Source: Macrostomum lignano (taxonomy: Eukaryota). Taken from it: a stretch of 64,000 nucleotides of DNA. The notes under the pieces were generated by a model. It had not been told where the DNA came from, made no database searches, and saw only the letters and a list, made by a program, of their open reading frames with translations. The position numbers and the translations under genes were made by a program. The stretch covers positions 124,001-188,000 of the forward strand of contig NIVC01001677.1 of assembly GCA_002269645.1 (NCBI GenBank), read 5' to 3'. This document shows, piece by piece, positions 11,108 through 64,000 of the stretch; the first letter of the stretch is position 1; every line of letters starts with the position of its first letter.

Positions 11108-11140
<33 letters not shown>

Positions 11141-11227
11141 CATACACAGAGAGACAGACAGACACATACACAGAGAGACAGACAGACAGACAGACATACA
11201 CAGAAAGACAGACAGACAGACATACAC

Positions 11228-11260
<33 letters not shown>

Positions 11261-11531
11261 TACACAGAAAGACAGACAGACAGACACATACACAGACAGA
11301 CAGACACATACAGACAGACAGACAGACAGACAGACAGTCAGACAGACAGACAGACAGACACAGACAGACACATACACAGAGAGACAGACAGACACATACA
11401 CAGAGAGACAGACAGACAGACACAGACAGACACATACACAGAGAGACAGACAGACAGACACATACACAGATAGACAGACAGACAGACAGACAGACATACA
11501 CAGAGAGACAGACAGACAGACAGACATACAC

Positions 11532-11568
<37 letters not shown>

Positions 11569-11571
11569 CAT

Positions 11572-11610
<39 letters not shown>

Positions 11611-20423: not shown

Positions 20424-20945
<522 letters not shown>

Positions 20946-45944: not shown

Positions 45945-46417
<473 letters not shown>

Positions 46418-47860
46418 TTCTACTGTCTGTGTGTTTACGTGGACTTTTTGGAAGTTCAGTAGCCTCGTTAGCTGGACCACCCGGTGTAGGTAGACCACTT
46501 AGGTGGACCACCAAATAATTTTGTCTCTGGTGGGGTTAAGACGTTGATGAGGATCTCAAATTAATGTCAGGCGGGTCAAGAAGGGCTCTAGCAATTTTGG
46601 AATGTCTAGCATGGTTTTTTCCAAAGTTATTCGCATTTCAGTTTAGCTGGACCTCCAGCCTGGTCTACCTAAACCGAGCGAGTCTGGTCCACGTAAACCG
46701 AAAAATTTCAGAAAATTTTTCGAAAATCGTCTGTTTGTGTCTGTTTGTGTCTGTTTGTGTATAGCAGTTATTAAGCATAGATTCGATGCAAAACTGAATT
46801 TTTTTACATATCATTACCTTACGAACAAATGGCTATGTTAACATCATATTATGACCGCCACTGGCCTTAAAACAATATGCGTTAAAATTCTTTGACATTC
46901 AAGTAGGTACGCAGGTTAATTTAAAATTCTGACAACCTCGTATGCGAAATGAATTTTATATAGTAAACTTTAAACTCCATTTAATTAGCTCAGTTCCAGC
47001 AATTCCGGTATCGTACTCTGAGCAGAGACTCACAGAGTAAGACACCAATGTAAAGAAATCCAATTTACTAACCAGATCAAGCGATAAAGACTCCGAGACA
47101 AGAAAGATATTTAAGTGAAGCTTAAACAATATTCTTCAATGACTTCTCAAGAACTCCCAGTGGTCCTTGATAGCCACACTGTGTAAATGAAAATTTCTGA
47201 GGCTCTACCATTACACAAGAAAAAATTAATAGCAACTTCATAAATTAAGTGCTTGCCAACTCTATCGCAAACACTATGGGATATCTTGAAGAAGAAGATC
47301 CTAAGCTGCAGCCTTTTAAGTGCAAAGTTGAAGATGCAATTTACCTAATTGAAAAGGGCCATTCATACATGTACATGCAAAATCAAGAGGACGCAATTAA
47401 GAAGGGCCTTTTAGCTAGAAATTGGGTCTCTGAATCTCTAGCAAAAGATCGACTTGATTGCGGTCCCAGTAAAACTAAGAACGCATTAACAGTCAGCCTA
47501 ACACTCACTGTCTGTTTGGTCCACGTAAACACATTTGCAGGATTATAGGGTTGGAACAGACAGACAGACAGACCTCCCTTTCTATAATTGGCTGGTTAAC
47601 ACTTAGGAGGAAAGATCAACCCCAACGATGGGACCGACCTCAGCCAATAGGAAACCCGCAAGGGTTCTGAAGGTAAGACTGTAGAGAGAGGGATATATAA
47701 TGTCTAAGCGGGTGGTCCCCGTAAACCATGGCGTAGTTAGACCACACACAGACAGTTTTATAAATTAGAACTGATTCTATTCACACTTATTAGGTCTAAC
47801 ATTATTTTCCATACTCTAAGTTTCATCTATAGATAAATTTATTGTGCCAAGCAAGATATA

Positions 47861-50800
47861 ATGACCCGAAAAAAAAACAAAAAGGACGCCAAGCCTAAGC
47901 CTAAGGTAAAACCTAAAAAAACTGCGACGCAAAAAGCCACTGCAAAATCGAAGAAGGCCGCATCGCCTGGTGAAAACCGACAGTCTGCTCGCAAAACCAT
48001 CGACACCGAGTCCAGAAAAGTGAGTTTCGTTTGATGATCTCAAAATAGCTAATTGCAAGGCCTATCTAACCTACAGACACAACTGAAGCAGCTCTCTCAG
48101 TCTGTTTGGGGCTTTGGCTCACAGAGCTGTCTTGAAAGTTTAGTGCAGGAATGCTTACGTTTCTTGGAATGCAATCAGAACAGATTCTTAGAAAGCGAGC
48201 TGGTCCACCATGAGATCAGAATGTCTGCACTGTGTAAATGAATGGTCTCTAGGCATTCCGACTCAGATTATCGCCTAGTAGTGCTGTAGAGAAGGTGGTC
48301 CACCTAACCTACAGACACAACTGAAGCAGCTCTCTCAGTCTGAGGGTCACACGGATACACTGCAGCGGTTTTGAATTTAAGCTTCCGACTTTGACTTGTC
48401 TTTTTATTCTCTAACTTCCTAGGAGCCTGAGGTCGAATTTCGTTCTCCTGAGCTCGACCAGTCTGACGCTTCGAAAAAGTTGAAATCGCGCTCTACGTCT
48501 GCATCACGCCTTGATGAAGGCGCTCAGTCGCACAACGCTACCGCGGATGCAGGCGCTACTCCAGCCTCGAAGAAGGCCGCATCGCCTGGTGAAAATCGTC
48601 GGTCTACTGGCAAATCCGTCGACACCGAGTCCAGAAAAGTGAGTTTCGCTTGATGATCTCAAAGTAGCTAGCTGCAACTCAATTGCTGTAGAGAAGCTGG
48701 TCCACCTAACCTACAGACACAACTGAAGCAGCTCTCTCAGTCTGTTTGGGGCTTTGAATCTTGGAAGGTGGTCCACCTAACCTACAGACACAACTGAAGC
48801 AGCTCTCTCAGTCTGTTTGGGGCTTTGACTTTTATAAGGTGGTCCACCTAACCTACAGACACAACTGATGCAGCTCTCTCAGTCTGTTTGGGGCCTTGGC
48901 TGTCAGAGCTGTCTTGAAAGTTTAGTGCGGGAATGTTTCCGTTTCTTGGAATGCAATCAGAACAGATTCTTAGAAAGCGAGCTGGTCCACCATGAGATCA
49001 GAATGTCTGCACTGTGTAAATGAATGGTCTCTAGGCATTCCGACTCAGATTATCGCCTAGTAGTGCTGTAGAGAAGGTGGTCCACCTAACCTACAAACAC
49101 AACTGGAGCAGCTCTCTCAGTCTGTTTGAGGGTCACACGTAGGGATGTCGACCCCGGGGAGTGCTCCCCGGGGCCCCGGGGAGCTTGTCGGGGAATATTC
49201 CCCGGGGAATTGAACCGGGGACCCCGGGGAGAAAAATGCATTTTTAACCTAATTTTTGCCATTAAAATAAGAAAATAATTCACAGAGAGCTGATTGAAAC
49301 TCTGTCTATGCTTTTCTTACCGCATAACTGCTTATCTCAATGTAAAATTTCAAACGCAACACACGTTTGAATGTTTTTTCACTACGAGTCCTTCAATCAA
49401 GCAAATTTCACCTAAAAACCCGTCAGGAAAAAGAAGCTTTACTGACTACTGTGTTGGTCTGCGTTGACGGCTTGACGGAATTTGACGCAGGCACAGCGCT
49501 GCGTCCTGCGGACGCATGGGGGTGTCATACAATAACAAAATGCTCCCTATTAGACAAGGACAATGTCTGCTAGAAATAAAAATTTTGATTATAAAAACAG
49601 TCTCATTCATTAATTATCCTCCCACGAGCGTAGCTGCTGAGCATGCATTTTCCGCCTCCACACCACAGTCTGGACTCCTTCTGACAAAGGTGCACGCACG
49701 ATTTGATGATGCCACGTTGTCAAATACAGTTTTAAATAAACACAAGCTCCCCGGGGTCGACATCCCTACTACAACCAAGGGATATAGGCATTTCTTAGGA
49801 GCCATTTAAATTTTAAAGTGATCTTATGCGAATTTTAATGTTAAAAGCTTCATGCTGTAACTAACTAATTTAGTAGGATTGCATTGTAATCAGTTATTCA
49901 TTAATTTTTCGCTATTTTTACAAACCATCCCACGTTGTCTTGACTCTTGATTTGCCATCTACTGTTATAACTGAGCCTGAAGACTTGTCTATACAGAGGA
50001 CAGTGTTTTGAATCTCTGGCTAAACTGTCTCTCCTCTCTGCGCCTCTCCACTCGCGGGTACAGAGAAGGCTATTAAAAAGTTATTCCAAAACACTGTACA
50101 TTCGCTATGTACATTAAGCCCAATCGCCTGACCCTTCGTCTGGGGGTCTGGGCTGGTGGAATGAGTGAGCGGCACAAACAACAGAAAAAGCAGACAAACT
50201 TCACATGCTTACAGTTTCTGTCCTGATTGAGATACAGAGTTGAGACTTTACATTTAGATAGAGAATGAGTCAATAAAGAATTGCGTCAAATTTGAAGTCA
50301 ATCGCTTCACGTGGAGCAAGCTTATGACAGCCGAAAGTTAGTCATTTTAAACCTATTTACACTCCTTTGCCCAGATCGGGAAAGAGAGGCAGGCGGGCGG
50401 AGGTTGGGGTGGTTGCCTCGCTGAAAAAACAGTTAATTTTAAAGTGCACAGCGCCTTTCAGGATTAACTTTGAGACTTGAAATTTTACACGGTTGAAAGG
50501 ATCGGTAGAAGTGGAGCGGCGCTATGGAGGATTTAGTAAAAAATCGCGCATTTTGAGCAGTTTTTGCACTTTTAGGTAGGAAGACTTGAGTTTAGGAAAT
50601 TTTAAGGTAGCCTAAGACATTCTCCGTAGTAAATTTAGGGCGGGTGCAAAAGTTATCGTAATTTGGTTGAGCGGTTTGGGACTTGGGAGTCCATAGCAAA
50701 GTAATTTGTACACAGACACACACGCAGACAGAGTTTTCATTTTTATAGGTAGAGATTGTTTAGTTTTTACCCTTGCGCCTTGAACATGTAGTCTAAAGCT

Positions 50801-53800
50801 AAAATCAAAGTTTAAAATGCCATTTAAGATCTAAGCCAAAGTTATTCGCCGTTTTTAACTTATTTTTAATTTTCCCCGGGGTCCCCGGGAATGACAGTAA
50901 ATTCCCCGGGTCCCCGATAAGAATATTCCCCGGGGAATCGACATCCCTAGTCACACGGATACACGGCAGCGGTTTTGAATTTAAGCTTCCGACGTTGACT
51001 TGTCTTTTTATTCTCTAACATCCTAGGAGCCTGAGTTCGAATTTCATTCTCCTGAGCTCGACCAGTCTGACGCTTCGAAAAAGTCGAAATCGCGCTCTGC
51101 GTCTGCATCACGCCTTGATGAAGGCTCTCAGTTGCACAACGCTACCGCGGATGCAGGCGCTACTCCAGCCTCGAAGAAGGCCGCATCGCCTGGTGAAAAT
51201 CGTCGGTCTACTCGCAAATACGTCGACACCGAGTCCAGAAAAGTGAGTTTCGCTTGATGATCTCAAAGTAGCTAGCTGCAACTCAATTGCTGTAGAGAAG
51301 CTCTTAAAAGGTGGTCCACCTAACCTACAGACACAACTGAAGCAGCTCTCTCAGTCTGTTTGGGGCTTTGACTCTTATAAGGTGGTCCACCTAACCTACA
51401 GACACAACTGAAGCAGCTTTCTCAGTCTGTTTGGGGCTTTGACTCTTGGAAGGTGGTCCACCTAACCTACAGACACAACTGAAGCAGCTCTCTCAGTCTG
51501 TTTGGGGCTTTGACTTTTATAAGGTGGTCCACCTAACCTACAGACACAACTGATGCAGCTCTCTCAGTCTGTTTGGGGCCTTGGCTGTCAGAGCTGTCTT
51601 GAAAGTTTAGTGCGGGAATGTTTCCGTTTCTTGGAATGCAATCAGAACAGATTCTTAGAAAGCGAGCTGGTCCACCATGAGATCAGAATGTCTGCACTGT
51701 GTAAATGAATGGTCTCTAGGCATTCCGACTCAGATTATCGCCTAGTAGTGCTGTAGAGAAGGTGGTCCACCTAACCTACAGACACAACTGAAGCAGCTCT
51801 CTCAGTCTGTTTGAGGGTCACACGGATACACTGCAGCGGTTTTGAATTTAAGCTTCCGACGTTGACTTGTCTTTTTATTCTCTAACTTCCTAGGAGCCCG
51901 AGGTCGAATTTCGTTCTCCTGAGCTCGACCAGTCTGAGGCTTCGAAAAAGTTGAAATCGCGCTCTGCGTCTGCATCACGCCTTGATGAAGGCGCTCAGTC
52001 GCACAACGCTACCGCGGATGCAAGCGCTACTCCAGCCTCGAAGAAGGCCGCATCGCCTGGTGAAAATCGTCGGTCTACTGGCAAATCCGTCGACACCGAG
52101 TCCAGAAAAGTGAGTTTCGCTTGATGATCTCAAAGTAGCTAGCTGCAACTCAATTGCTGTAGAGAAGCTGGTCCACCTAACCTACAGACACAACTGAAGC
52201 AGCTCTCTCAGTCTGTTTGGGGCTTTGAATCTTGGAAGGTGGTCCACCTAACCTACAGACACATCTGAAGCAGCTTTCTCAGTCTGTTTGGGGCTTTGAC
52301 TCTTGGAAGGTGGTCCACCTAACCTACAGACACAACTGAAGCAGCTCTCTCAGTCTGTTTGGGGCTTTGACTTTTATAAGGTGGTCCACCTAACCTACAG
52401 ACACAACTGAAGCAGCTCTCTCAGTCTGTTTGGGGCTTTGACTCTTAAAAAGTGGTCCACCTAACCTACAGACACAACTGAAGCAGCTCTCTCAGTCTGT
52501 TTGGGGCTTTGACTCTTGGAAGGTGGTCCACCTAACCTACAGACACAACTGAAGCAGCTCTCTCAGTCTGTTTGGGGCTTTGACTCTTAGAAGGTGGTCC
52601 ACCTAACCTACAGTCAAAACTTATGTACTGTTTAGGCGTTTCCGTAATGGAGTAATATGTGAGAAATTTTTTTTTATTTTAGTTTCTACAGGGCTGTTTG
52701 GTCGAGCAGTTTACATTGGATTCTCTTCGAGGGAAGCGAGTTTTTTTTCTGTACGGCGAAAGTCAAAAGCGACAAAAGAAGCTGGAATCTGCCGTCGTCT
52801 ATTATGGCGGAAGCGTTGCTTCGTTTTTTTCAAATGAGGTGTGTAGTTTTTGCAATGCATTCGTTGTTTTTGTTTGTTGCTTGTTAATAGGGCAGATTAG
52901 AGACGTTGATAGATTTTTTGTAGCTATGGGCTCGTATTTTTTGCTTTTCCAGGTTGATTTAATCATCGCTGACGATTCCGCTGTCTCCATTGAAGCTAAA
53001 CAATCTTTTTCGGAGTTTTCTAGGGGTTTCACCATGCAGCAGAGAGCCGTTACGCAAACTTCGAGTTCGCAATGCAGAATTGTCAAAACATTCGAAGATA
53101 TTTTGACGAAAGCTCGCTTGCTGCAAATACCTGTCTACACTCCGGCAATATTTCGAGATCGAATTCGCGATCAAGTTTCTCAACACGAGCTGTGCCAGAA
53201 AACTATTTCTTCAGGGAGGTTTGCCGAAGAAGATCGGAATTTGACCCCACCGGCCGTTGTTGTTACGGATGCCCAGCATTTGCTGAGACCAATCTTCAAA
53301 GATAACATTGATGTCGTCGACATTTTTGCAAACCCAAGGGCTAATAATAACGATGAAAAAAATCGTCAAAAGCCTGACGGCAAAGAAAAACGGAAAGGTC
53401 GGTGTGAAAACTGTCGCGAAGCCTACGACGACTTTAATCAGCACATAACATTAAGCCAAAAGCACCAAGATTTCGTTTCGAATAAAAAAAATTTTTACTG
53501 AAATCGACCAAATCATTTCAACTCTTCCGACGCTAGACAGCGCCCTAAATGAAGCGACTCAAAAGGCTACCGCTCCTATGACACATCATGACACGAAAAA
53601 ACCGGATTCGAAAGCACTACCTAACATATTTCAGCAAAATGACGGTGATAGACGCCAAGCCGCATCGCTTGGCGAAAATCGTCAGTCTGCTCGCAAATAC
53701 GTCGACACCGAGTCCAAAAAAGTGAGTTTCGTTTAATGATCTCAAAATAGCTAGCTGCATGCAACTCAATTGCTGTAGAGAAGTTCTTAAAAGGTGGTCC

Positions 53801-56800
53801 ACCTAACCTACAGACACAACTGAAGCAGCTCTCTCAGTCTGTTTGGGGCTTTGACTTTTATAAGGTGGTCCACCTAACCTACAGACACAACTGAAGCAGC
53901 TCTCTCAGTCTGTTTGGGGCTTTGACTCTTAAAAGGTGGTCCACCTAACCTACAGGCACAACTAAAGCAGCTCTCTCAGTCTGTTTGAGGGTCACACGGA
54001 TACACGGCAGCGGTTTTGAATTTAAGCTTCCGACTTTGACTTGTCTTTTTATTCTCTAATTTCCTAGGAGCCTGAGGTCGAATTTCGTTCCCGCCAAATC
54101 GAACGCACTGGTGCCTCAAAAAGAGGGCGGAAATCGCGAAGCCGTTCGCGCTCTGCATCACGCCTTGATGAAGGCGCTCAGTCGCACAACGCTACCGCGG
54201 ATGCAGGCGCTACTCCAGCCTCGAAGAAGGCCGCATCGCCTGGTGAAAATCGTCGGTCTACTGGCAAATCCGTCGACACCGAGTCCAGAAAAGTGAGTTT
54301 CGCTTGATGATCTCAAAGTAGCTAGCTGCAACTCAATTGCTGTAGAGAAGCTGGTCCACCTAACCTACAGACACAACTGAAGCAGCTCTCTCAGTCTGTT
54401 TGGGGCTTTGACTCTTGGAAGGTGGTCCACCTAACCTACAGACACAACTGAAGCAGCTCTCTCAGTCTGTTTGGGGCTTTAACTCTTAAAAGGTGGTCAA
54501 CCTAACCTACAGACACAACTGAAGCAGCTCTCTCAGTCTGTTTGGGGCTTTGACTTTTATAAGGTGGTCCACCTAACCTACAGACACAACTGAAGCAGCT
54601 CTCTCAGTCTGTTTGGGGCTTTGACTTTTATAAGGTGGTCCACCTAACCTACAGACACAACTGAAGCAGCTCTCTCAGTCTGTTTGGGGCTTTGACTTTT
54701 ATAAGGTGTCCACCTAACCTACAGACACAACTGAAGCAGCTCTCTCAGTCTGTTTGGGGCTTTGACTCTTGGAAGGTGGTCCACCTAACCTACAGACACA
54801 ACTGAAGCAGCTCTCTCAGTCTGTTTGGGGCCTTGGCTGTCAGAGCTGTCTTGAAAGTTTAGTGCGGGAATGTTTCCGTTTCTTGGAATGCAATCAGAAC
54901 AGATTCTTAGAAAGCGAGCTGGTCCACCATGAGATCAGAATGTCTGCACTGTGTAAATGAATGGTCTCTAGGCATTCCGACTCAGATTATCGCCTAGTAG
55001 TGCTGTAGAGAAGGTGGTCCACCTAACCTACAGACACAACTGAAGCAGCTCTCTCAGTCTGTTTGAGGGTCACACGGATACACGGCAGCGGTTTTGAATT
55101 TAAGCTTCCGACTTTGACTTGTCTTTTTATTCTCTAACTTCCTAGGAGCCTGAGGTCGAATTTCGTTCCCGCCAAATCGAACGCACTGGTGCCTCAAAAA
55201 GAGGGCGGAAATCGCGAAGCCGTTCGCGCTCTGCATCACGCCTTGATGAAGGCGCTCAGTCGCACAACGCTACCGCGGATGCAGGCGCTACTCCAGCCTC
55301 GAAGAAGGCCGCATCGCCTGGTGAAAATCGTCGGTCAACTGTCAAATCCGTCGACACCGAGTCCAGAAAAGTGAGTTTCGCTTGATGATCTCAAAGTAGC
55401 TAGCTGCAACTCAATTGCTGTAGAGAAGCTGGTCCACCTAACCTACAGACATCAACTGAAGCAGCTCTCTCAGTCTGTTTGGGGCTTTGACTTTTATAAG
55501 GTGGTCCACCTAACCTACAGAAACAACTGAAGCAGCTCTCTCAGTCTGTTTGGGGCTTTGACTTTTATAAGGTGGTCCACCTAACCTACAGACACAACTG
55601 AAGCAGCTTTCTCAGTCTGTTTGGGGCTTTGACTTTTATAAGGTGGTCCACCTAACCTACAGACACAACTGAAGCAGCTCTCTCAGTCTGTTTGGGGCTT
55701 TGACTTTTATAAGGTGGTCCACCTAACCTACAGACACAACTGAAGCAGCTCTCTCAGTCTGTTTGAGGGTCACACGGATACACGGCAGCGGTTTTGAATT
55801 TAAGCTTCCGACTTTGACTTGTCTTTTTATTCTCTAACTTCCTAGGAGCCTGAGGTCGAATTTCGTTCCCGCCAAATCGAACGCACTGGTGCCTCAAAAA
55901 GAGGGCGGAAATCGCGAAGCCGTTCGCGCTCTGCATCACGCCTTGATGAAGGCGCTCAGTCGCACAACGCTACCGCGGATGCAGGCGCTACTCCAGCCTC
56001 GAAGAAGGCCGCATCGCCTGGTGAAAATCGTCGGTCTACTGGCAAATCCGTGGACACCGAGTCCAGAAAAGTGAGTTTCGCTTGATGATCTCAAAGTAGC
56101 TAGCTGCAACTCAATTGCTGTAGAGAAGCTGGTCCACCTAACCTACAGACACAACTGAAGCAGCTCTCTCAGTCTGTTTGGGGCTTTGACTTTTATAAGG
56201 TGGTCCACCTAACCTACAGACACAACTGAAGCAGCTCTCTCAGTCTGTTTGGGGCTTTGACTTTTATAAGGTGGTCCACCTAACCTACAGACACAACTGA
56301 AGCAGCTCTCTCAGTCTGTTTGGGGCTTTGGCTCTCAGAGCTGTCTTGAAAGTTTAGTGCGGGAATGTTTCCGTTTCTTGGAATGCAATCAGAACAGATT
56401 CTTAGAAAGCGAGCTGGTCCACCATGAGATCAGAACGTCTGCACTGTGTAAATGAATGGTCTCAAGGCATTCCGACTCAGATTATCGCCTAGTAGTGCTG
56501 TAGAGAAGGTGGTCCACCTAACCTACAGACACAACTGAAGCAGCTCTCTCAGTCTGTTTGGGGCTTTGACTCTTAAAAGGTGGTCCACCTAACCTACAGA
56601 CATCAACTGAAGCAGCTCTCTCAGTCTGTTTGGGGCTTTGACTCTTAAAAGGTGGTCAACCTAACCTACAGACACAACTGAAGCAGCTCTCTCAGTCTGT
56701 TTGGGGCTTTGACTTTTATAAGGTGGTCCACCTAACCTACAGACACAACTGAAGCAGCTCTCTCAGTCTGTTTGGGGCTTTGACTTTTATAAGGTGGTCC

Positions 56801-59800
56801 ACCTAACCTACAGACACAACTGAAGCAGCTCTCTCAGTCTGTTTGAGGGTCACACGGATACACGGCAGCGGTTTTGAATTTAAGCTTCCGACTTTGACTT
56901 GTCTTTTTATTCTCTAACTTCCTAGGAGCCTGAGGTCGAATTTCGTTCCCGCCAAATCGAACGCACTGGTGCCTCAAAAAGAGGGCGGAAATCGCGAAGC
57001 CGTTCGCGCTCTGCATCACGCCTTGATGAAGGCGCTCAGTCGCACAACGCTACGCGGATGCAGGCGCTACTCCAGCCTCGAAGAAGGCCGCATCGCCTGG
57101 TGAAAATCGTCGGTCTACTGGCAAATCCGTGGACACCGAGTCCAGAAAAGTGAGTTTCGCTTGATGATCTCAAAGTAGCTAGCTGCAACTCAATTGCTGT
57201 AGAGAAGCTGGTCCACCTAACCTACAGACACAACTGAAGCAGCTCTCTCAGTCTGTTTGGGGCTTTGACTTTTATAAGGTGGTCCACCTAACCTACAGAC
57301 ACAACTGAAGCAGCTCTCTCAGTCTGTTTGGGGCTTTGACTTTTATAAGGTGGTCCACCTAACCTACAGACACAACTGAAGCAGCTCTCTCAGTCTGTTT
57401 GGGGCTTTGGCTCTCAGAGCTGTCTTGAAAGTTTAGTGCGGGAATGTTTCCGTTTCTTGGAATGCAATCAGAACAGATTCTTAGAAAGCGAGCTGGTCCA
57501 CCATGAGATCAGAACGTCTGCACTGTGTAAATGAATGGTCTCAAGGCATTCCGACTCAGATTATCGCCTAGTAGTGCTGTAGAGAAGGTGGTCCACCTAA
57601 CCTACAGACACAACTGAAGCAGCTCTCTCAGTCTGTTTGGGGCTTTGACTCTTAAAAGGTGGTCCACCTAACCTACAGACATCAACTGAAGCAGCTCTCT
57701 CAGTCTGTTTGGGGCTTTGACTCTTAAAAGGTGGTCAACCTAACCTACAGACACAACTGAAGCAGCTCTCTCAGTCTGTTTGGGGCTTTGACTTTTATAA
57801 GGTGGTCCACCTAACCTACAGACACAACTGAAGCAGCTCTCTCAGTCTGTTTGGGGCTTTGACTTTTATAAGGTGGTCCACCTAACCTACAGACACAACT
57901 GAAGCAGCTCTCTCAGTCTGTTTGAGGGTCACACGGATACACGGCAGCGGTTTTGAATTTAAGCTTCCGACTTTGACTTGTCTTTTTATTCTCTAACTTC
58001 CTAGGAGCCTGAGGTCGAATTTCGTTCCCGCCAAATCGAACGCACTGGTGCCTCAAAAAGAGGGCGGAAATCGCGAAGCCGTTCGCGCTCTGCATCACGC
58101 CTTGATGAAGGCGCTCAGTCGCACAACGCTACCGCGGATGCAGGCGCTACTCCAGCCTCGAAGAAGGCCGCATCGCCTGGTGAAAATCGTCGGTCTACTG
58201 GCAAATCCGTCGACACCGAGTCCAGAAAAGTGAGTTTCGCTTGATGATCTCAAAGTAGCTAGCTGCAACTCAATTGCTGTAGAGAAGCTGGTCCACCTAA
58301 CCTACAGACACAACTGAAGCAGCTCTCTCAGTCTGTTTGGGGCTTTGACTCTTAAAAGGTGGTCCACCTAACCTACAGACACAACTGAAGCAGCTCTCTC
58401 AGTCTGTTTGGGGCTTTAACTCTTAAAAGGTGGTCAACCTAACCTACAGACACAACTGAAGCAGCTCTCTCAGTCTGTTTGGGGCTTTGACTTTTATAAG
58501 GTGGTCCACCTAACCTACAGACACAACTGAAGCAGCTCTCTCAGTCTGTTTGGGGCTTTGACTCTTGGAAGGTGGTCCACCTAACCTACAGACACAACTA
58601 AAGCAGCTCTCTCAGTCTGTTTGGGGCTTTGGCTCTCAGAGCTGTCTTGAAAGTTTAGTGCGGGAATGTTTCCGTTTCTTGGAATGCAATCAGAACAGAT
58701 TTTTAGAAAGCGAGCTGGTCCACCATGAGATCAGAACGTCTGCACTGTGTAAATGAATGGTCTCAAGGCATTCCGACTCAGATTATCGCCTAGTAGTGCT
58801 GTAGAGAAGGTGGTCCACCTAACCTACAGACACAACTGAAGCAGCTCTCTCAGTCTGTTTGGGGCTTTGACTCTTGGAAGGTGGTCCACCTAACCTACAG
58901 ACACAACTGAAGCAGCTCTCTCAGTCTGTTTGGGGCTTTGGCTCTCAGAGCTGTCTTGAAAGTTTAGTGCGGGAATGTTTCCGTTTCTTGGAATGCAATC
59001 AGAACAGATTCTTAGAAAGCGAGCTGGTCCACCATGAGATCAGAACGTCTGCACTGTCTAAATGAAGGGTGTCTAAACGTTTTGACTTAGATTATCGCGT
59101 TGTAGTGCTTCAGAGAATTGACTTATTGACTTTTCAGGAAAAATGAGCTAATGAGTATATCTAAGCTATGTAACTTGCTGTTTATTTTTCAGGTTTGCGA
59201 TAGAGACGGCGATGCTACCAAAGCAAGGATAGACGTTGCTTTCGATTTAGTAGATGATGATTCGTTTGTGGACAAAAATCTTACGGTAGTAGACGATATT
59301 CTTGGTGGAAGGTTGCACTCAGCTTTAAGGGACATTGCAAATACGAGTATACTACCTGAGGACGCTGAACTCGAGGAAGAAGATGGTGATGAAGATTATT
59401 ATTTGGAGGAAGTCTGGTCTGATGATTTAGTTCCGTCCCAAGCGAAACTTAAGCATGAGAAGAAGAGGCATTGCTGCCTCTTTTGCGGAGAAATGTTTTC
59501 GAAGATCAGAAGGCATCCTATTCGGGCACACTCGAAGGAAATGTGTGTACAGCGCGCCCTCGCATTTAATCCTAAGTCTGATAGTAAGTTTTTGAAATAA
59601 GTTTTTTATGTAGGTCCTCATAGTAGTATTTAGTTTGTCTGAAAATAATTATCTGTTCATATTTTTTTCAGAATATGACCAGGAATTTGATCGCTTGCGC
59701 TTTCGAGGAGATTACGAACATAACATAAAAGTTATGACCCAGGAGAAGGAGGGAGGAATCATTGTGTGTCGCGAAAGAAGTTCTTCGGACATGAAAGATA

Positions 59801-62136
59801 ATGAAGTTTCGTATTTGCCGTGCATTCACTGTTTTGGATTTTTTCGTAAAACTGAGTTAAGCAGGCATGTTCAGCGCTGCCGCTTTGTCGTAAATGTCAG
59901 CGATTTGAACAGGCGCACAGAAGCTGTCAGTGCAGGACGCTGCCTTCTCCTTGCATCATGCTTTCCGGCGAAATATCCGTCCAAATTTATTGAACTTATT
60001 AATAAAATGAAGGTAGACTCATGTAGCAAAGTAGCTCAATCAGACAAGCTTATAATGGAACTTGGCTACTACGCCTATGAAGGTTTTACATCCGGAAAGA
60101 CAGGAAAGAAAATTGTAACTGCGAAAATGCGTGAAATGTCGAGATTACTTATGTCAGCTCGTGAAATTATGGGCGATCCCAGCGCTTGTCTTGACGATTT
60201 GCTGAAGCCATCATCATTTGATTTAGTTGTTGAGGCGACTCGAAATGTAGCGAAATTTACGGCCCAAGAAGATGCTCAGATTTGCGATTCTTTTTCTATT
60301 CCTTCGATGGCACTTAAGTGCGGGTTTTCTCTGAAGCTGGCTGCTGAACTGTCGTTAGTACGTGCCGTGAAATGCGAAATGCCCGAAGTAGCTCAGGAGC
60401 GACGCAACTTCATCACTCTGTATGAAACATCATGGAGCCGTAAAATATCTTCGATTGCACTTTTGTCCTTGAAAGAAAGAAAAATTGACAAGGGTCAGAC
60501 ATTGCCGTTAACTAGCGACATTCAGTTAATCACGAAGCACATTAACGAATATTTAAGCCACATCGACACGGAAAAGCTAAAAAGCAGCCCTTCTTACTGG
60601 AAAGAGGTGGCCGAATATGTTGCGATTCGTTTGTCTATTTTCAACAAGCGCCGGGCGTCTGAGCCCTTCAAGCTGCGAGTTTCGGCGTGGCAGAAAGCAA
60701 GATCATGCAAAGATGTTGATGATACAACATTATCTGCGCTAAGTGAATTAGAAAAGCAAATGCTTTACCGGTTGACTATCGTTAATGTTCGAGGTAAGAG
60801 AGCACAGCGACCGGTTCCTCTGCTAGTTTCGAATGAGATTGCTGAAATTATCGATGAGCTCATTCGCACAAGACACCACGCTTCAAGTCCTTACGTATTC
60901 TGCAGTAGTGGAAGTTTGGGATATATATCCCCATTCGTTGCGCGCACAAATGTTGTCTCCAGTTGTCAAGGGCTCCAGTTCCCTGCTCGTCTATCTTCGA
61001 CCAACCTTCGAAAATACATTGCCACTGTCTCTCAGATCCTTGAAATGAGAGAAAATGAGCTCGGATGGCTCTCCAACCATCTTGGACATAGCCTTAATGT
61101 TCACCATAATTTCTATCGATTGCATGAAAACACTATTGAGCTTGCTAAAGTAGGCAAGCTACTTCTGGCTATCGAGGCCGGTAGATTCGACCAGCTTAAA
61201 GGCAAAACTATCGAAGAGATTGATGTTAACGACATCGAAATTGACTATGACATTGACGATAAGTCAGATGCAAAAAAAGATGATTTGAACGAATCCGGTG
61301 ATGTGGAAGCCTCAATAGGCTCACAGGCTCGAGAATTAAAACGTGGTGACCAAAAGAGTCAAGCACCTCCTGAGAATAATGGAGCTCGTATCCAAGCTAA
61401 GGAATTTGAGGACGAGTCAATTTATCACGAAGGTTCTGTCGACTTTCGCGGAGCCCCCCTGTCCATCAAGCAAGTCGAAAAAAAGAAGAATCGATTAGCT
61501 GTGCTCGACTCAGATGAATATGAAAGCGAAGTAGACAAAGACGATTCAGACTACCAACCGACGAAAAAAACCAGAAAAGTGCAGAAAGCTAGAGCAAACG
61601 AAAGGCGGATTCGAAGGACGACTAAGCCAAAGGGTGCGACAGCAACAACGACTAATAACAAAAGCGAGCCAGGACATGGACAAGAGGACCCACAGAAGGA
61701 CAAAAGCGAGCCAGGACCCGGACAAGAGGACCCACAGAAGGACAAAAGCGAGCCAGGACCCGGACAAGAGGACCCACAGAAGGACAAAAGCGAGCCAGGA
61801 CCCGGACAAGAGGACCCACAGAAGGACAAAAGCGCTCCTAGTTCGGAAGGTAAGGACAAAATGGGAACTGGGGGGAAGAAAAAAACCAAAGTTGATTTCA
61901 GTTACTTCAATCCATTTCAGAAGTCAAGAAAAAAACTAATTCAGGAGCACATTGCGTGGAACAAAGACGAAAATGAGGCAATTAACCGCGCGATAGAAAA
62001 GATCGAAGACGGCAAAGTACCTGGTTTTGCAGCCCTTGGAGAGCTAAAAGCACGCGAACCTGCACTCCAGTCACGATCGATCCATAAAATAAAAACGAAG
62101 TTTTTCAATGAAATGAAAAAACGCGGCATTTTGTGA
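47861..62136 (+). CDS. Predicted 13-exon H1-like/repeat/DBF4-like/tyrosine recombinase fusion gene, ~1900 aa, with two 1-nt frameshifts as assembled
   Basis: Exons 47861-48019, 48423-48638, 51027-51242, 51894-52109, 52683-52838, 52953-53721, 54068-54292, 55146-55370, 55846-56070, 56926-57149, 58005-58229, 59193-59583, 59672-62136. All have AG/GT boundaries; all junctions are phase 0 except the last (phase 1, compatible). There is +1 nt at ~53482-53496 and -1 nt at ~57052. Confidence 0.65.
49140..50949 (+). mobile_element. Non-autonomous hAT element (1810 bp) inserted in an intron of the YR gene
   Basis: TIRs TAGGGATGTCGA and TCGACATCCCTA; perfect TSD GTCACACG (49132-49139, 50950-50957), which is single in sister repeat units; CCCCGGGG subterminal repeats; hAT dimerization remnant YPPTSVAAEHAFSAS..GLLLTKVHARFDDATLS near 49610-49720. 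Confidence 0.93.
50260..50756 (-). mobile_element. Possible non-autonomous Helitron-like 5' fragment inside the hAT cargo
   Basis: The minus strand begins A|TCTCTACCTATAAAAATGAAAACTCTGTCTGCGTGTGTGTCTG, a TC start followed by a GTCT-like tract as in many invertebrate Helitron-like elements. No CTAG 3' end was found. Confidence 0.3.
52683..53721 (+). CDS. DBF4: DBF4-like exons (motif N/BRCT, motif M, zf-DBF motif C)
   Basis: After removing the in-frame intron 52839-52952: LRGKRVFF..KLESAVVYYGGSVASFFSNE|VDLIIAD..ILTKARLLQIPVY (N); LTPPAVVVTDAQHLLRPIFKD (M); KGRCENCREAYDDFNQHITLSQKHQDFVSN, continuing (+1 frame) as EIDQII (C). Confidence 0.85.
59193..62136 (+). CDS. Tyrosine recombinase exons with Cys/His N-terminal motifs, acidic linker, 14-aa repeat and Myb/SANT-like tail
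   Basis: CLFCGEMFSKIRRH and YLPCIHCFGFF..LSRHVQRC precede catalytic-type motifs FNKRRASE (R), VRGKR (K), STNLRKYIAT (R) and LGHSLNVHHNFYR (H,Y). KSEPGPGQEDPQKD occurs about 4 times (42 bp). C-terminus is WNKDENEAI..GKVPG..EPALQSRSIHKIK. Confidence 0.88.
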
Positions 62137-62229
62137 CTAAACGCTTTATGATTGCTAACACTAAGATTAAAAAGCATCTATTAGTTTAGCTGACAAGAAA
62201 TACCTGTTCACTATCGATAGCATAGCGAT

Positions 62230-62320
62230 GGCTTTTGGGGGCGGTCCAAGTTTGGGACGCCAAAATGAGTATGAGGGGCGCCAATTTTTAAGCTGGGGGT
62301 GCAAAAAACGTGTAGGGGGG
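62230..62320 (-). mobile_element. Fragment of the same MITE family as 27741-28048, inverted
   Basis: GGGGGCGGTCCAAGTTTGGG..GAGTATGAGGGGCGCCAATTTTTAAGCTGGGGG is the reverse complement of ~27950-28020, with substitutions. Confidence 0.75.
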
Positions 62321-62329
62321 GGAATGCGA

Positions 62330-63190
62330 GTCGCCGTTTTAAAAATGCTTCAATTTCTTGTATCTGTTTGATACAATTTCCATTTTAATAACTGTCGCCG
62401 TTTTAAAAATGCTTCAATTTCTTGTATCTGTTTGATACAATTTCCATTTTAATAACTGTCGCCGTTTTAAAAATGCTTCAATTTCTTGTATCTGTTTGAT
62501 ACAATTTCCATTTTAATAACTGTCGCCGTTTTAAAAATGCTTCAATTTCTTGTATCTGTTTGATACAATTTCCATTTTAATAACTGTCGCCGTTTTAAAA
62601 ATGCTTCAATTTCTTGTATCTGTTTGATACAATTTCCATTTTAATAACTGTCGCCGTTTTAAAAATGCTTCAATTTCTTGTATCTGTTTGATACAATTTC
62701 CATTTTAATAACTGTCGCCGTTTTAAAAATGCTTCAATTTCTTGTATCTGTTTGATACAATTTCCATTTTAATAACTGTCGCCGTTTTAAAAATGCTTCA
62801 ATTTCTTGTATCTGTTTGATACAATTTCCATTTTAATAACTGTCGCCGTTTTAAAAATGCTTCAATTTCTTGTATCTGTTTGATACAATTTCCATTTTAA
62901 TAACTGTCGCCGTTTTAAAAATGCTTCAATTTCTTGTATCTGTTTGATACAATTTCCATTTTAATAACTGTCGCCGTTTTAAAAATGCTTCAATTTCTTG
63001 TATCTGTTTGATACAATTTCCATTTTAATAACTGTCGCCGTTTTAAAAATGCTTCAATTTCTTGTATCTGTTTGATACAATTTCCATTTTAATAACTGTC
63101 GCCGTTTTAAAAATGCTTCAATTTCTTGTATCTGTTTGATACAATTTCCATTTTAATAACTGTTGCCCTTTTAAAAATGCTTCAACTTCT
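62330..63190. repeat. 64-bp AT-rich tandem array, about 13 near-identical copies
   Basis: Unit GTCGCCGTTTTAAAAATGCTTCAATTTCTTGTATCTGTTTGATACAATTTCCATTTTAATAACT; one or two diverged copies at ~63350-63440. Confidence 0.97.
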
Positions 63191-63873
63191 TGTACTCCCT
63201 ATGACTTTTTTAACTAATGCAATCCTAAGTTTGTTAAACGTGTAGTTTAAGAATGTACTTCCGGACTTAAATTAGTTTCAATGACTTTGCAGTTAGTTTA
63301 ATTAGGTTTAAATCTTTTGCGTTAAGGCAAGCGAAATGATGCGGTATTTATTTTCAAAATGCTTCAATTTCTTATATCTGTTTGATACAATTTCCATTTT
63401 AATAACTGTTGCCGTTTTAAAAATGCTTCAACTTCTTGTATCCCTGAGTGTGCGTTGTTTTTCTTTCGTAACTAATGCAGTTTAACCCATAGTTTAGTAA
63501 AGCTAAATAAATTCGTTTGAACCAGGGTTTTTTTAATAAAATGGAATCGTAAACCTTTTTTATCTTCTGTTTCTTGAGAATTTCTGTTTTAATTAGCCCA
63601 AAATAACAGTTTGAAACTCATAAATTTTCTACAAAGAAAGAGGTCTAACTAAACCAACTGTTTTTTTGCGGTCCACCTAACCCGGTCCCCAAAACGTAGT
63701 TAGTGAACCGCCACAGTTTCCACGAACTGGCTATTCCGTCAAGTTAACAAAAAGATAACCCTAGCTAGCCTTTCGCGTTGTCAAAACAGACTCTATTTTT
63801 TAACCGGAATTGCGTGGTCCACGTAACGCATTAACATAACTCAGGTCCCGCTAAACACACAGACAGTCGTAAG

Positions 63874-63875
63874 AG

Positions 63876-63932
<57 letters not shown>

Positions 63933-63933
63933 T

Positions 63934-64000
<67 letters not shown>
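63874..64000. repeat. (GTCT)n microsatellite, right flank of the YR element
   Basis: AGTG then a GTCT run to the window end, same orientation as the left flank. Confidence 0.98.

What the first reader, a model, noticed from the sequence alone, without database searches (positions are those of the whole stretch)
47861..62136. A mobile tyrosine recombinase apparently fused to a complete DBF4 (CDC7-kinase activator) module
Seen: exons 52683-52838 and 52953-53721 encode all three Dbf4 motifs (N/BRCT, M, zf-DBF C) in compact form. They lie in a chain of phase-0 exons that starts at ATG 47861 and splices in frame into the YR exons at 59193. Established: Dbf4 motifs M and C bind and activate Cdc7 (DDK), which phosphorylates MCM to fire replication origins; Crypton-type YRs excise and integrate DNA via circles. 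Inference: this element captured Dbf4 and could recruit or activate host Cdc7, tying transposition or replication of an excised circle to S phase. I do not know of a described DBF4-YR fusion, but novelty needs a search.
Basis: partly seen in the sequence, partly recalled or inferred. Interest (0 to 1): 0.95.

Follow-up and report, generated by a model that had tools for sequence, protein, structure and literature searches.

The report
Flatworm transposon that captured Dbf4
A 17.4-kb mobile DNA element of the flatworm Macrostomum lignano has a single large gene that joins a tyrosine recombinase to a copy of the host's Dbf4, the activator of the Cdc7 kinase that fires replication origins; I found no report of this combination, and it hints at a link between transposition and DNA replication.

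Summary
The window is Macrostomum lignano DNA. Exons 52692-52838 and 52953-53721 encode a Dbf4 module with motif N (BRCT), motif M and the zf-DBF finger. This module sits in a GT-AG, phase-0 exon chain running from ATG 47861 into a tyrosine-recombinase (YR) gene that ends at 62136.

In this window the frame is broken twice: by one extra base in an A8T5 run (53484-53496, giving a stop at 53499) and by a 1-nt deletion in repeat exon R7. Three assemblies disagree at the homopolymer, and ML2-derived proteins read through it, so it is probably an assembly error.

The host has a separate canonical Dbf4 (Mlig017237) with the same intron position, so the module was captured as genomic DNA.

The unit behaves as a mobile element. 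It has 23-bp imperfect terminal inverted repeats (46422-46444 and 63845-63867) and direct (TGTC)n arrays at both ends. It carries about 60 element-specific GGTCCANNTAA motifs, and its copies lie between unrelated flanks. A paralogous element carries a chromodomain at the same N-terminal position, and coral and fish relatives carry a SET domain.

No other Dbf4-YR protein and no paper describing one was found. A full-length transcript, binding to Cdc7 and circular intermediates remain untested.

The parts
45996..46421 (+). 5' flanking (TGTC)n array, degenerate from 46368; proposed recombination (att-like) tract
   Evidence: The same array in the same orientation flanks all 5 element copies examined.
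46422..46444 (+). 5' terminal inverted repeat, ACTGTCTGTGTGTTTACGTGGAC
   Evidence: It matches the reverse complement of 63845-63867. A related TIR is found in the chromodomain paralog.
46445..47860 (+). 5' subterminal region, promoter and 5'UTR, with GGTCCANNTAA motifs: three inverted (46468, 46499, 46643) and two direct (46686, 47518)
47861..48019 (+). Exon 1 (ATG; lysine-rich N-terminus)
   Evidence: In-frame stops lie upstream. The tail of this exon is present in the ML2 model P0033.
48423..52109 (+). Repeat exons R1 (48423-48638), R2 (51027-51242) and R3 (51894-52109), each 216 nt and phase 0, with introns that carry 71-bp tandem arrays
52692..52838 (+). Dbf4 exon 1: first half of motif N (BRCT)
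52953..53721 (+). Dbf4 exon 2: rest of the BRCT domain, motif M (53241-53300), zf-DBF motif C (53388-53526), and a tail that merges into the 3' end of a repeat exon (from about 53653). One extra base in the A8T5 run at 53484-53496 gives a stop at 53499-53501.
54068..58229 (+). Repeat exons R4 (54068-54292), R5 (55146-55370), R6 (55846-56070), R7 (56926-57149, 1-nt deletion) and R8 (58005-58229), with intronic 71-bp arrays
   Evidence: P0002 uses four of these exons.
48692..58945 (+). Twelve intronic arrays of a 71-bp tandem unit, each unit carrying GGTCCACCTAAC. About 50 direct copies of the motif lie in and beside these arrays.
59193..59583 (+). YR exon 1: acidic region and first C2H2-like zinc finger (from 59469)
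59672..62136 (+). YR exon 2: second zinc finger (59815-59841); catalytic motifs NKRR (60640-60663), GKR (60787-60807), STNLRKY (60997-61017) and HLGH..HNFY (61078-61122, Tyr at 61114-61116); acidic and 42-nt repeat region; conserved C-terminal domain of about 60 aa that looks Myb/SANT-like by eye (no Pfam hit); stop at 62134-62136
62330..63194 (+). 64-bp tandem array (13.5 copies) in the 3' region; copy number differs in the Mlig_3_7 copy
63670..63827 (+). 3' subterminal direct motif copies (63670-63681 and 63816-63827)
63845..63867 (-). 3' terminal inverted repeat (reverse complement reads ACTGTCTGTGTGTTTAGCGGGAC)
63876..64000 (+). 3' flanking (TGTC)n array, which runs off the end of the window

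Best explanation
The region 46422-63867 is one copy of a roughly 17.4-kb autonomous DNA transposon of Macrostomum lignano that is mobilised by a tyrosine recombinase. It is Crypton-like in the operational sense.

Its single multi-exon gene (47861-62136) encodes, from N- to C-terminus: a basic N-terminus; tandemly amplified low-complexity exons; a captured N-M-C module of the host's Dbf4; more repeat exons; two zinc fingers; the YR; and a conserved C-terminal domain.

Shown here:
- the exon anatomy;
- the Dbf4 identity of the module and its origin from the host gene, with the intron retained;
- the YR fold and conserved catalytic motifs;
- TIRs plus direct (TGTC)n arrays at both ends;
- element-specific GGTCCANNTAA motifs, inverted at the 5' end and direct at the 3' end;
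- copies lying between unrelated flanks.

Inferred:
(a) The element excises as a circle and integrates by YR recombination into genomic (TGTC)n tracts, which leaves a (TGTC)n array on each side.
(b) GGTCCANNTAA is the binding site of the element's own protein.
(c) The N-terminal position of this YR family holds an exchangeable chromatin-tethering module: Dbf4 here, a chromodomain in the M. lignano paralog, and SET in coral and fish relatives.
(d) The Dbf4 module binds host Cdc7 through motifs M and C, and/or docks on MCM double hexamers through its BRCT domain. This would bring the recombinase and its DNA to licensed or firing origins and couple transposition to S phase. Such coupling would let a cut-and-paste circle gain copies.

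My probabilities: anatomy, capture and mobility about 0.8; one fused protein actually made about 0.65; step (d) about 0.35.
For: Organism and YR:
- P0001 and P0002 of M. lignano are 96-99% identical to the window's YR.
- The AF2 model has pLDDT 81.5. The only high-probability Foldseek PDB match is the XerA recombinase (probability 1.0).
- The motifs NKRR, GKR, LRKY and HLGH..H..FY are conserved in about 25 family members.

Dbf4 module:
- zf-DBF scores 58.5 bits, E 6.5e-16, over the whole profile. BRCT scores E 1.2e-3.
- All 11 invariant columns of a 10-protein Dbf4 alignment are retained, including the D and P of motif M.
- The top Foldseek hits are yeast Dbf4 in DDK-MCM complexes and the Dbf4 HBRCT crystal structures.

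Capture from the host:
- The best non-self match among 1.84 billion representative proteins is M. lignano Mlig017237 (P0038, E 2e-17).
- P0038 aligns colinearly from N through M to C at 30% identity, E 3e-24.
- Its gene lies between ferlin-like and Ariadne-like genes.
- Its intron falls at FFSKQ|VD, the same place as FFSNE|VD in the element.

Exon chain:
- GT-AG junctions, all phase 0.
- An 1825-codon ORF after one homopolymer correction and skipping R7.
- Model P0030 joins Dbf4 exon 1, exon 2 and a repeat exon. Model P0002, from the RNA-seq-guided annotation, starts at ATG 53578 inside Dbf4 exon 2 and runs into the YR. Model P0033 joins E1-R1-R2-R3-Dbf4 exon 1 and continues to the YR.

Mobility:
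- Three chromodomain-YR copies share homology only between their (TGTC)n arrays and have no flank homology.
- The window and the Mlig_3_7 copy are 99% identical inside the element but have different 5' flanks.
- TIRs are present.
- The motif occurs 58 times inside the element and 0 times in the 46.5 kb outside it. The same layout is seen in the paralog, whose protein is only 50% identical.

Exchangeable N-terminal modules: a chromodomain in P0003; homologous SET domains in P0196 and P0200.
Against: - No direct RNA or protein evidence was available for a full-length fusion. P0002's coding sequence begins downstream of the zinc finger. P0033 is a partly garbled and over-extended gene prediction.
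- The window's sequence has a stop in the zf-DBF finger and a frameshift in R7. The Mlig_3_7 copy is also out of frame at the same homopolymer. If these are real, the gene is decaying.
- GenBank carries a 77-aa antisense CDS over the Dbf4 exons, so the annotators did not recognise a Dbf4 ORF there.
- Only one flank could be compared between the two Dbf4-YR copies, because the window ends inside the 3' array. A misassembly at the microsatellite could mimic a second insertion site.
- (TGTC)n is abundant in this genome, so flanking arrays alone are weak evidence of target choice.
- The box-II histidine of the classical R-H-R-Y tetrad appears to be threonine in this family. This reading comes from the motif alignment only.
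- Motif M has no Pfam hit and low pLDDT, although the host's own Dbf4 also lacks a Pfam hit for it.
- Nothing here tests Cdc7 binding.
Confidence: 0.68

Rival explanations
1. The element is the same, but the proteins are separate. The Dbf4 exons and the YR belong to one mobile unit but are expressed as distinct products, through alternative splicing of the symmetric phase-0 cassette exons, internal polyadenylation or SL trans-splicing. Dbf4 would then be cargo or an accessory gene and not a fusion domain.
For: All exons are phase 0-0, so any of them can be skipped. M. lignano resolves many precursor RNAs by trans-splicing (PMC5730564). P0002's CDS starts after the zinc finger. P0001 starts just upstream of the YR exon.
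Against: Dbf4 exon 1 has no ATG before the BRCT domain, and the Dbf4 exons lie between coding repeat exons of the same frame. P0030 reads from Dbf4 into a repeat exon with no stop. P0002 links the same exon 2 to the YR. The paralog's chromodomain is annotated in one CDS with its YR in three RNA-seq-guided models.
Confidence: 0.2
2. It is a decaying relic. The fusion once existed, but the frameshifts at 53484-53496 and in R7 are real, so this copy, and perhaps all copies, no longer makes a Dbf4-YR protein.
For: The window and the Mlig_3_7 copy are both out of frame at the same site. R7 has a 1-nt deletion outside any long homopolymer.
Against: Three assemblies give three different lengths (A8T5, A7T4 and an in-frame A8T4) at a single homopolymer, which is typical of long-read indel error. 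Apart from that, there is no substitution across 1.2 kb between the two copies. All Dbf4 invariant residues and all YR catalytic motifs are intact. R7 can be skipped without changing the frame, and P0002 has four repeat exons.
Confidence: 0.1
3. It is a host gene, not a transposon. On this view a domesticated YR gene family acquired chromatin-related domains, and its copies arose by segmental duplication or neopolyploidy and not by transposition.
For: Copy number is low, and the models passed the annotators' repeat filter. The gene structure is intron-rich. Crypton-derived host genes are known (PMC3212892).
Against: Homology between copies stops exactly at the TIR and (TGTC)n boundaries, and the flanks are unrelated. 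One copy is nested in an intron of an Ank/ARM gene. TIRs and an element-specific motif are conserved between paralogs whose proteins are 50% identical. The catalytic residues are kept, unlike in DUF3504 genes. The phyletic distribution is patchy and the family is multi-copy in Acropora and oyster.
Confidence: 0.08
4. It is chance adjacency. On this view the genome's only, syntenic Dbf4 gene happens to have a YR element inserted next to it, and the gene predictors merged the two.
For: Only the general tendency of gene predictors to merge neighbouring genes. P0033 does also swallow a downstream gene.
Against: A separate canonical Dbf4 (P0038 and P0186, 594-597 aa, with the usual long tail) exists in a normal gene context. 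The Dbf4 exons lie inside the TIR-bounded unit, embedded in its repeat-exon array, and exon 2 ends in repeat-exon sequence. They are present in both copies.
Confidence: 0.01

Closest known systems
Crypton DNA transposons (Goodwin et al. 2003; Kojima & Jurka 2011, PMC3212892; active CryptonF-1_cRei, PMC9977147)
   Same: The only transposition enzyme encoded is a YR; there is no RT and no DDE transposase. Copy number is low. A short sequence is repeated directly at both ends and is plausibly the crossover substrate. The circle excision-integration model fits the anatomy.
   Different: No Pfam DUF3504 or Phage_integrase hit. It has 23-bp imperfect TIRs, whereas animal Cryptons are reported to have none. 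The terminal direct repeat is a whole (TGTC)n microsatellite and not 4-6 bp. There are about 60 internal copies of a motif shared with the termini. The protein is much longer and carries zinc fingers, a conserved C-terminal domain and a captured Dbf4 module. Placement among the Repbase Crypton clades could not be tested.
Dbf4/Dfp1/ASK, the regulatory subunit of Cdc7 kinase (DDK); closest relative is M. lignano Mlig017237 (P0038)
   Same: Motifs N (BRCT), M and C (CCHH zf-DBF) occur in the canonical order. All invariant residues are kept. The intron position matches the host gene. The fold matches yeast Dbf4 in DDK-MCM complexes.
   Different: Only 30% identical to the host Dbf4. It lacks the long C-terminal tail and the host N-terminus. 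It is embedded in a transposon gene between low-complexity repeat exons and upstream of a recombinase. It is not the organism's canonical Dbf4.
The chromodomain-YR paralog of M. lignano (Mlig016835, P0003), and by analogy the chromodomain integrases of chromoviruses
   Same: Same element design: (TGTC)n arrays, TIR, N-terminal module exon, amplified exon-intron repeat units whose introns carry motif arrays, zinc fingers, YR and the conserved C-terminal domain. The Dbf4 module occupies the position held by a chromatin reader that is known to target integration in other transposons.
   Different: A chromodomain in place of Dbf4. The intronic repeat is 83 bp and carries GGTCCAGCTAA. The proteins are 50% identical. 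Chromoviruses are LTR retrotransposons with DDE integrases.
Yeast 2-micron plasmid (Flp YR, FRT sites in inverted repeats, STB repeat array, host-dependent origin)
   Same: A eukaryotic YR combined with inverted recombinase sites and an array of direct repeats on one DNA unit. It offers a precedent for a YR-encoding circle whose copy number depends on host replication.
   Different: The 2-micron plasmid is an extrachromosomal plasmid with an ARS and the Rep1/Rep2 proteins. No episomal form, origin or partition function has been shown here. The analogy rests on resemblance only.
Host-gene capture by transposons (Pack-MULEs, Helitrons, Starship cargo)
   Same: Host exons, with their intron, are incorporated into a mobile unit.
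   Different: Here the captured exons are spliced in frame into the recombinase gene itself, and their functional motifs have stayed intact despite about 70% sequence divergence.

Membership tests
Crypton (YR-only eukaryotic DNA transposon) | Encodes a tyrosine recombinase with conserved catalytic residues and no RT or DDE transposase | tested here: met
   The top Foldseek match is XerA. The R, K, xxR and H..Y motifs are conserved family-wide; the box-II His appears to be Thr. No other Pfam domain was found in the element's ORFs.
Crypton (YR-only eukaryotic DNA transposon) | [quoted passage not shown] | tested here: met
   (TGTC)n arrays in the same orientation flank all 5 copies. Homology between copies ends inside the arrays. 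The repeat is a 4-bp unit, but in arrays of 3 to more than 100 units.
Crypton (YR-only eukaryotic DNA transposon) | No terminal inverted repeats (as reported for animal Cryptons, PMC3212892) | tested here: not met
   23-bp imperfect TIRs at 46422-46444 and 63845-63867. A related TIR is present in the paralog.
Crypton (YR-only eukaryotic DNA transposon) | Copies at different genomic sites | tested here: met
   Three chromodomain-YR copies have unrelated flanks on both sides. Two Dbf4-YR copies have unrelated 5' flanks. The 3' flank could not be compared.
Crypton (YR-only eukaryotic DNA transposon) | YR groups with CryptonA/I/F/S, or shows DUF3504 similarity | tested here: not met
   No DUF3504 or Phage_integrase hit even at E <= 10. 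A phylogeny against Repbase Cryptons cannot be built with these tools.
Crypton (YR-only eukaryotic DNA transposon) | Excision as a circle and site-specific reintegration | not testable with these tools
   Needs PCR across the circle junction, eccDNA sequencing or empty-site data.
Dbf4/Dfp1/ASK family | Motif C: CCHH zf-DBF zinc finger | tested here: met
   PF07535, 58.5 bits (cut-off 24.8), positions 1-45 of 45, in the in-frame protein P0030. It aligns to the yeast and human DBF4 fingers, including NFxxID beyond the frameshift site.
Dbf4/Dfp1/ASK family | Motif M (proline-rich, ..PPxhKVxD....RP..) | tested here: met
   LTPPAVVVTDAQHLLRPIFK (53241-53300) aligns with the consensus LxPPFIKVEDxSxxYRPxY, and the invariant D155 and P162 are kept. 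Caveats: no Pfam hit, which the host Dbf4 also lacks, and low pLDDT.
Dbf4/Dfp1/ASK family | Motif N: BRCT-like domain upstream of motif M | tested here: met
   Pfam BRCT at 19.5 bits is below the 21.3 cut-off. However, the model matches the Dbf4 HBRCT structures 3qbz, 5t2f, 3oq0 and 3oq4 and full Dbf4 chains at probability 1.0.
Dbf4/Dfp1/ASK family | Binds and activates Cdc7 | not testable with these tools
   Needs co-IP or a kinase assay.
Dbf4/Dfp1/ASK family | Is the organism's canonical (orthologous) Dbf4 gene | tested here: not met
   The canonical gene is Mlig017237 (P0038 and P0186), which lies in a normal gene context and has a long tail.
DIRS/Ngaro/PAT YR retrotransposons | Reverse transcriptase and RNase H alongside the YR | tested here: not met
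   No RT or RNase H ORF lies between the TIRs.
Domesticated Crypton-derived genes (DUF3504: WOC/ZMYM, KCTD1, KIAA1958) | Catalytic tetrad largely lost; a single syntenic host locus | tested here: not met
   The catalytic motifs are conserved. Copies sit at unrelated sites and have TIRs.

The most novel reading that the evidence does not exclude
The element could be a transposon that carries its own replication trigger. After excision as a circle, the fusion protein would bind the roughly 60 iteron-like GGTCCANNTAA sites on its own DNA and use the Dbf4 module to bring active Cdc7 to MCM complexes loaded there. The circle would then replicate, or the donor would re-replicate, before it reintegrates into a (TGTC)n tract. 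That would be a DDK-hijacking, plasmid-like phase in an animal DNA transposon. It would also explain how circle-forming YR elements gain copies.
Probability: 0.12. Interest if true: 0.95.

Novelty: new variant of a known kind. Interest (0 to 1): 0.8.

Why it matters
YR-only (Crypton-type) elements are the least understood eukaryotic DNA transposons. Active Cryptons gain copies even though they excise cleanly, and the reason is unknown (PMC9977147).

A recombinase that carries an intact copy of the Cdc7 activator gives a concrete, testable link between transposition and origin licensing or firing. Its relatives carry a chromodomain or a SET domain in the same position, which suggests a family of recombinases with exchangeable chromatin-tethering heads.

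M. lignano has working transgenesis and RNAi, so the idea can be tested in vivo.

If the recombinase proves to be specific for GGTCCANNTAA and (TGTC)n sites, it could also become a new site-specific recombination tool for animals.

Tried and rejected
Searches that found nothing:
- Pfam on the YR ORF, even at E <= 10.
- A sequence-profile search of the YR family against the PDB. It gave no recombinase hit; only the fold comparison found XerA.
- An empty-site test, by looking up the window's upstream 563-aa ORF in other assemblies. It is not on record.
- Fetching the coral SET-YR loci. They are not on record.
- Gene identifiers Mlig000236, Mlig016835 and Mlig017237 in papers and in the supplements of PMC5730564.
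- Literature searches for Crypton or tyrosine recombinase with Dbf4, for Macrostomum with DBF4, and for Dbf4 with transposon capture. Crypton with Macrostomum returned one unrelated review.

Explanations considered and rejected:
- This is the only Dbf4 of the genome.
- The copies are polyploid homeologs. Rejected because the flanks are unrelated.
- It is a DIRS- or Ngaro-type retroelement. Rejected because there is no RT.
- The 47948-59117 repeat field is just a satellite. Rejected because it is a higher-order repeat of coding exon plus intron that annotated models use.
- Other Dbf4-YR fusions exist. None of the 148 non-self Dbf4-like representatives matched the YR profile.

Full report
**Identity of the window**

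The 833-aa ORF at 59635-62136 is 96-99% identical to two Macrostomum lignano proteins. These are P0001 and P0002, the latter annotated as BOX15_Mlig000236g2. The window is therefore genomic DNA of this free-living flatworm. Elsewhere it carries ordinary host genes, namely a class C GPCR at 2601-5348 and a SPRING1 exon at about 11653-12042. It also has many (TGTC)n/(GACA)n microsatellites.

**Checking the observation**

The frame that starts at 52602 encodes a BRCT-like stretch (LRGKRVFFLYGE...GGSVASFFSNE), a 114-nt GT-AG intron, and then a long exon ending in a DBF zinc finger. Pfam finds zf-DBF in the raw ORF at E 3.6e-10.

Read literally, the second exon (52953-53721) is 769 nt long and stops at TGA 53499-53501, inside the finger. 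The conserved continuation (TEIDQIISTL...) lies in the +1 frame.

The break sits in an A8T5 homopolymer at 53484-53496. The Mlig_3_7 assembly copy (L001) has A7T4 there. Two proteins derived from the ML2 assembly (P0030 and P0032) read NKKNFTEIDQIISTL in frame, which implies A8T4. Three assemblies thus give three lengths at one homopolymer, and there is no other difference across 1.2 kb. I treat the stop as a probable assembly error, but this needs resequencing.

The in-frame protein P0030 gives:
- a full-length zf-DBF match (58.5 bits, E 6.5e-16);
- a sub-threshold BRCT match (19.5 bits against a cut-off of 21.3);
- an alignment to the yeast and human DBF4 fingers that continues past the frameshift site.

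**The exon chain**

A tblastn search with P0002, together with inspection of the splice sites, gives the following exons:
- E1, 47861-48019 (ATG, with in-frame stops upstream);
- R1, 48423-48638;
- R2, 51027-51242;
- R3, 51894-52109;
- Dbf4 exon 1, 52692-52838;
- Dbf4 exon 2, 52953-53721;
- R4, 54068-54292;
- R5, 55146-55370;
- R6, 55846-56070;
- R7, 56926-57149 (1-nt deletion);
- R8, 58005-58229;
- YR exon 1, 59193-59583;
- YR exon 2, 59672-62136.

All junctions are GT-AG. All are phase 0 except the last intron. With one T removed and R7 skipped, the chain is an uninterrupted 1825-codon ORF.

Independent annotated models use these junctions:
- P0030 joins Dbf4 exon 1, exon 2 and a repeat exon.
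- P0002 starts at ATG 53578 inside Dbf4 exon 2 and runs through four repeat exons into the YR. It comes from the GenBank annotation, which was built from StringTie/TACO RNA-seq assemblies (PMC5730564).
- P0033, the 1855-aa ML2 model, joins E1-R1-R2-R3-Dbf4 exon 1 and later the YR.

P0002 starts where it does because that is the first ATG after the frame break in the Mlig_3_7 copy. This is what an ORF caller would produce on a transcript that extends further upstream. It is consistent with a fused mRNA but does not prove one.

**Is the module really Dbf4, and is it complete?**

A full HMMER scan of 1.84 billion representative proteins returned 187 hits. Several aligned across the whole module, from N through M to C.

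In a 10-protein alignment, the element's copy keeps all 11 invariant columns. These include the D and P of motif M (LTPPAVVVTDAQHLLRPIFK against the consensus LxPPFIKVEDxSxxYRPxY) and the CCHH ligands.

An AlphaFold2 model is confident for the BRCT domain and the finger and poor for motif M. Its best PDB matches are yeast Dbf4 chains in DDK-MCM double-hexamer structures (7p5z_G at E 2.4e-7, also 7pt7, 7v3v and 7pt6) and the Dbf4 HBRCT crystal structures 3qbz, 5t2f, 3oq0 and 3oq4.

From established knowledge, which I did not test here: motifs M and C suffice to bind and activate Cdc7 (human CDC7-DBF4 structure 4F99), and the BRCT domain mediates docking on Rad53 and on MCM.

**Captured from the host, not the host's own Dbf4**

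The best non-self hit is M. lignano Mlig017237 (P0038 and P0186, 594-597 aa, E 2e-17). It has motifs N, M and C plus the usual long disordered tail. Its gene lies between ferlin-like and Ariadne-like genes.

P0030 and P0038 align colinearly at 30% identity (E 3e-24).

The host gene has an intron at FFSKQ|VDCLI, the same place and phase as FFSNE|VDLII in the element. The module was therefore copied as genomic DNA and not from mRNA.

In the window, about 1 kb of DNA (52620-53658) that contains the Dbf4 exons is unique. It is embedded in the repeat field. The last 69 nt or so of exon 2 are homologous to the 3' end of a repeat exon. The capture thus replaced part of one repeat unit and preserved phase 0.

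This refutes the 'only, syntenic Dbf4 with a chance neighbour' alternative.

**The recombinase**

Pfam and PDB sequence searches find nothing. An alignment-based AlphaFold2 model (pLDDT 81.5) has one high-probability PDB match, the XerA tyrosine recombinase (probability 1.0, E 1.6e-3).

The family alignment shows FNKRR-x-x-E, GKR, (S/T)TxLRKY and HLGHxxxVHxxFYR, conserved across about 25 proteins. The box-II histidine appears to be threonine throughout. This reading comes from motif alignment only.

Two C2H2-like fingers precede the YR, and a conserved C-terminal domain follows it. That domain looks Myb/SANT-like by eye but has no Pfam hit.

Relatives occur patchily in bivalves, beetles, a leafhopper, corals, an octocoral, a nemertean, a crinoid and a pipefish. 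In some of these the family is multi-copy.

**Evidence that the unit is mobile**

The M. lignano paralog P0003 (50% identical, with an N-terminal chromodomain) exists at three loci. These share 96-99% identity only between two (TGTC)n arrays and have no detectable flank homology. One copy lies in an intron of an Ank/ARM gene.

The window's element and L001 are 99% identical from the 5' array to the 3' end. Their 5' flanks, however, are unrelated, and the L001 flanks are absent from the window's 46 kb.

In all five copies, (TGTC)n arrays in the same orientation border the element.

Just inside the arrays are 23-bp imperfect inverted repeats (46422-46444 and 63845-63867). A related TIR is present in the paralog.

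The motif GGTCCANNTAA occurs 58 times between the TIRs and never in the other 46.5 kb of the window. Only 0.3 matches are expected by chance for the 12-mer. Three copies are inverted next to the 5' end. The rest are direct, lying mostly in the 71-bp intronic tandem arrays and beside the 3' end.

The paralog has the same layout. Its 83-bp intronic repeats share only this motif (GGTCCAGCTAA) with the 71-bp repeats. A motif conserved between elements whose proteins are 50% identical, in otherwise unalignable DNA, is most simply a binding site for the element's protein. This is inference.

No RT, DDE transposase or other domain is encoded inside the element.

**Proposed mechanism**

The anatomy fits the Crypton model. 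In that model, the element excises as a circle and integrates by YR recombination between a short sequence on the circle and the same sequence in the target, leaving a direct repeat on each side (PMC3212892; observed for the active CryptonF-1_cRei, PMC9977147). Here the crossover tract would be (TGTC)n. Array lengths vary between copies (3 to more than 100 units), as expected if the crossover can happen in any register of the repeat.

The function of the Dbf4 module is not shown. I favour tethering: the N-terminal position holds a chromodomain in the paralog and homologous SET domains in coral and pipefish relatives. On that view the position carries an exchangeable chromatin-targeting head. 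The Dbf4 version would bind Cdc7 and/or MCM double hexamers and place recombination at licensed or firing origins in S phase.

This would address the open question of how excising Cryptons gain copies. The bolder alternative is that the protein bound to its motif arrays recruits DDK to replicate the excised circle. The evidence does not exclude this, but nothing supports it directly.

**Comparison with known elements, and novelty**

Operationally this is a Crypton-like YR-only element. It fails two tested membership criteria: it shows no similarity to DUF3504 or to the Pfam integrase models, and it has TIRs. Its clade placement could not be tested.

The module is a true Dbf4 family member by sequence and by fold, but it is not the canonical gene.

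None of the 148 non-self Dbf4-like representatives carries this YR. Five literature searches found no description of a Dbf4-transposon or Dbf4-recombinase combination, or of Cryptons in Macrostomum.

I rate it a new variant of a known kind, of high interest. It remains conditional on transcript-level confirmation.

**Limits**

- There is no direct RNA or protein evidence.
- The window's own frame is broken at two 1-nt indels.
- Only the 5' flank could be compared for the two Dbf4-YR copies.
- The roles proposed for the motif and for (TGTC)n, and any interaction with Cdc7, are inferences.

Noticed in passing
L002 8865-17650; L003 8868-47299; L004 1765-17658 (Mlig_3_7 contigs NIVC01000850, NIVC01001364, NIVC01001010): A paralogous chromodomain-YR element is present at three unrelated sites. 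Its internal exon-plus-intron repeat unit (about 1.2-1.3 kb, with 83-bp sub-repeats) ranges from a few copies to roughly 25 copies, which stretches one gene to 36 kb.
   Followed up: partly
P0196 (Acropora millepora, SET at aa 43-152) and P0200 (pipefish Corythoichthys intestinalis): Members of the same YR family carry homologous N-terminal SET domains (45% identity over 55 aa). This suggests recurrent or ancient fusion of chromatin modules to this recombinase. The loci could not be fetched.
   Followed up: partly
window 62330-63194: A near-perfect 64-bp tandem array (13.5 copies, 99% matches) lies in the element's 3' region. Its copy number differs from the Mlig_3_7 copy, and it is absent from the chromodomain paralog. 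Function unknown.
   Followed up: no
window 48640-51026: The 2.4-kb intron between R1 and R2 holds about 1.8 kb (49140-50950) that is not part of the repeat field and has no recognisable ORF or domain. It is conserved in the Mlig_3_7 copy.
   Followed up: no
L001 9227-9460 (equivalent to window 52803-53036, minus strand): GenBank annotates a 77-aa CDS antisense to the Dbf4 exons and across their intron. It is probably an artefact of ORF calling on a transcript whose sense frame is broken by the homopolymer error.
   Followed up: no
window 9890-11653, 20438-20947, 45996-46367, 63876-64000: There are long (TGTC)n/(GACA)n microsatellites. Those away from the element are in the opposite orientation and have no element beside them. 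If (TGTC)n is the integration target, the genome offers very many sites.
   Followed up: partly
P0040, P0047, P0060, P0154 (ENA and Logan contigs, 244-264 aa): These are very short Dbf4-like proteins made of motifs N, M and C only, with no tail. They come from unidentified eukaryotic contigs and resemble the size of the captured module.
   Followed up: no
window 2601-5348 (+); 11653-12042 (+): Ordinary host genes lie in the window: a class C GPCR (ANF_receptor, NCD3G and 7tm_3) and a SPRING1 homolog exon that directly follows a microsatellite-derived pseudo-ORF.
   Followed up: partly
P0031 (UniProt A0A1I8JFC0): This is an ML2 gene model of the same Dbf4 exons that skips the zinc finger and then reads the repeat exons in a wrong frame. 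Its database name ('NTP_transf_2 domain-containing') is unrelated to its sequence.
   Followed up: no
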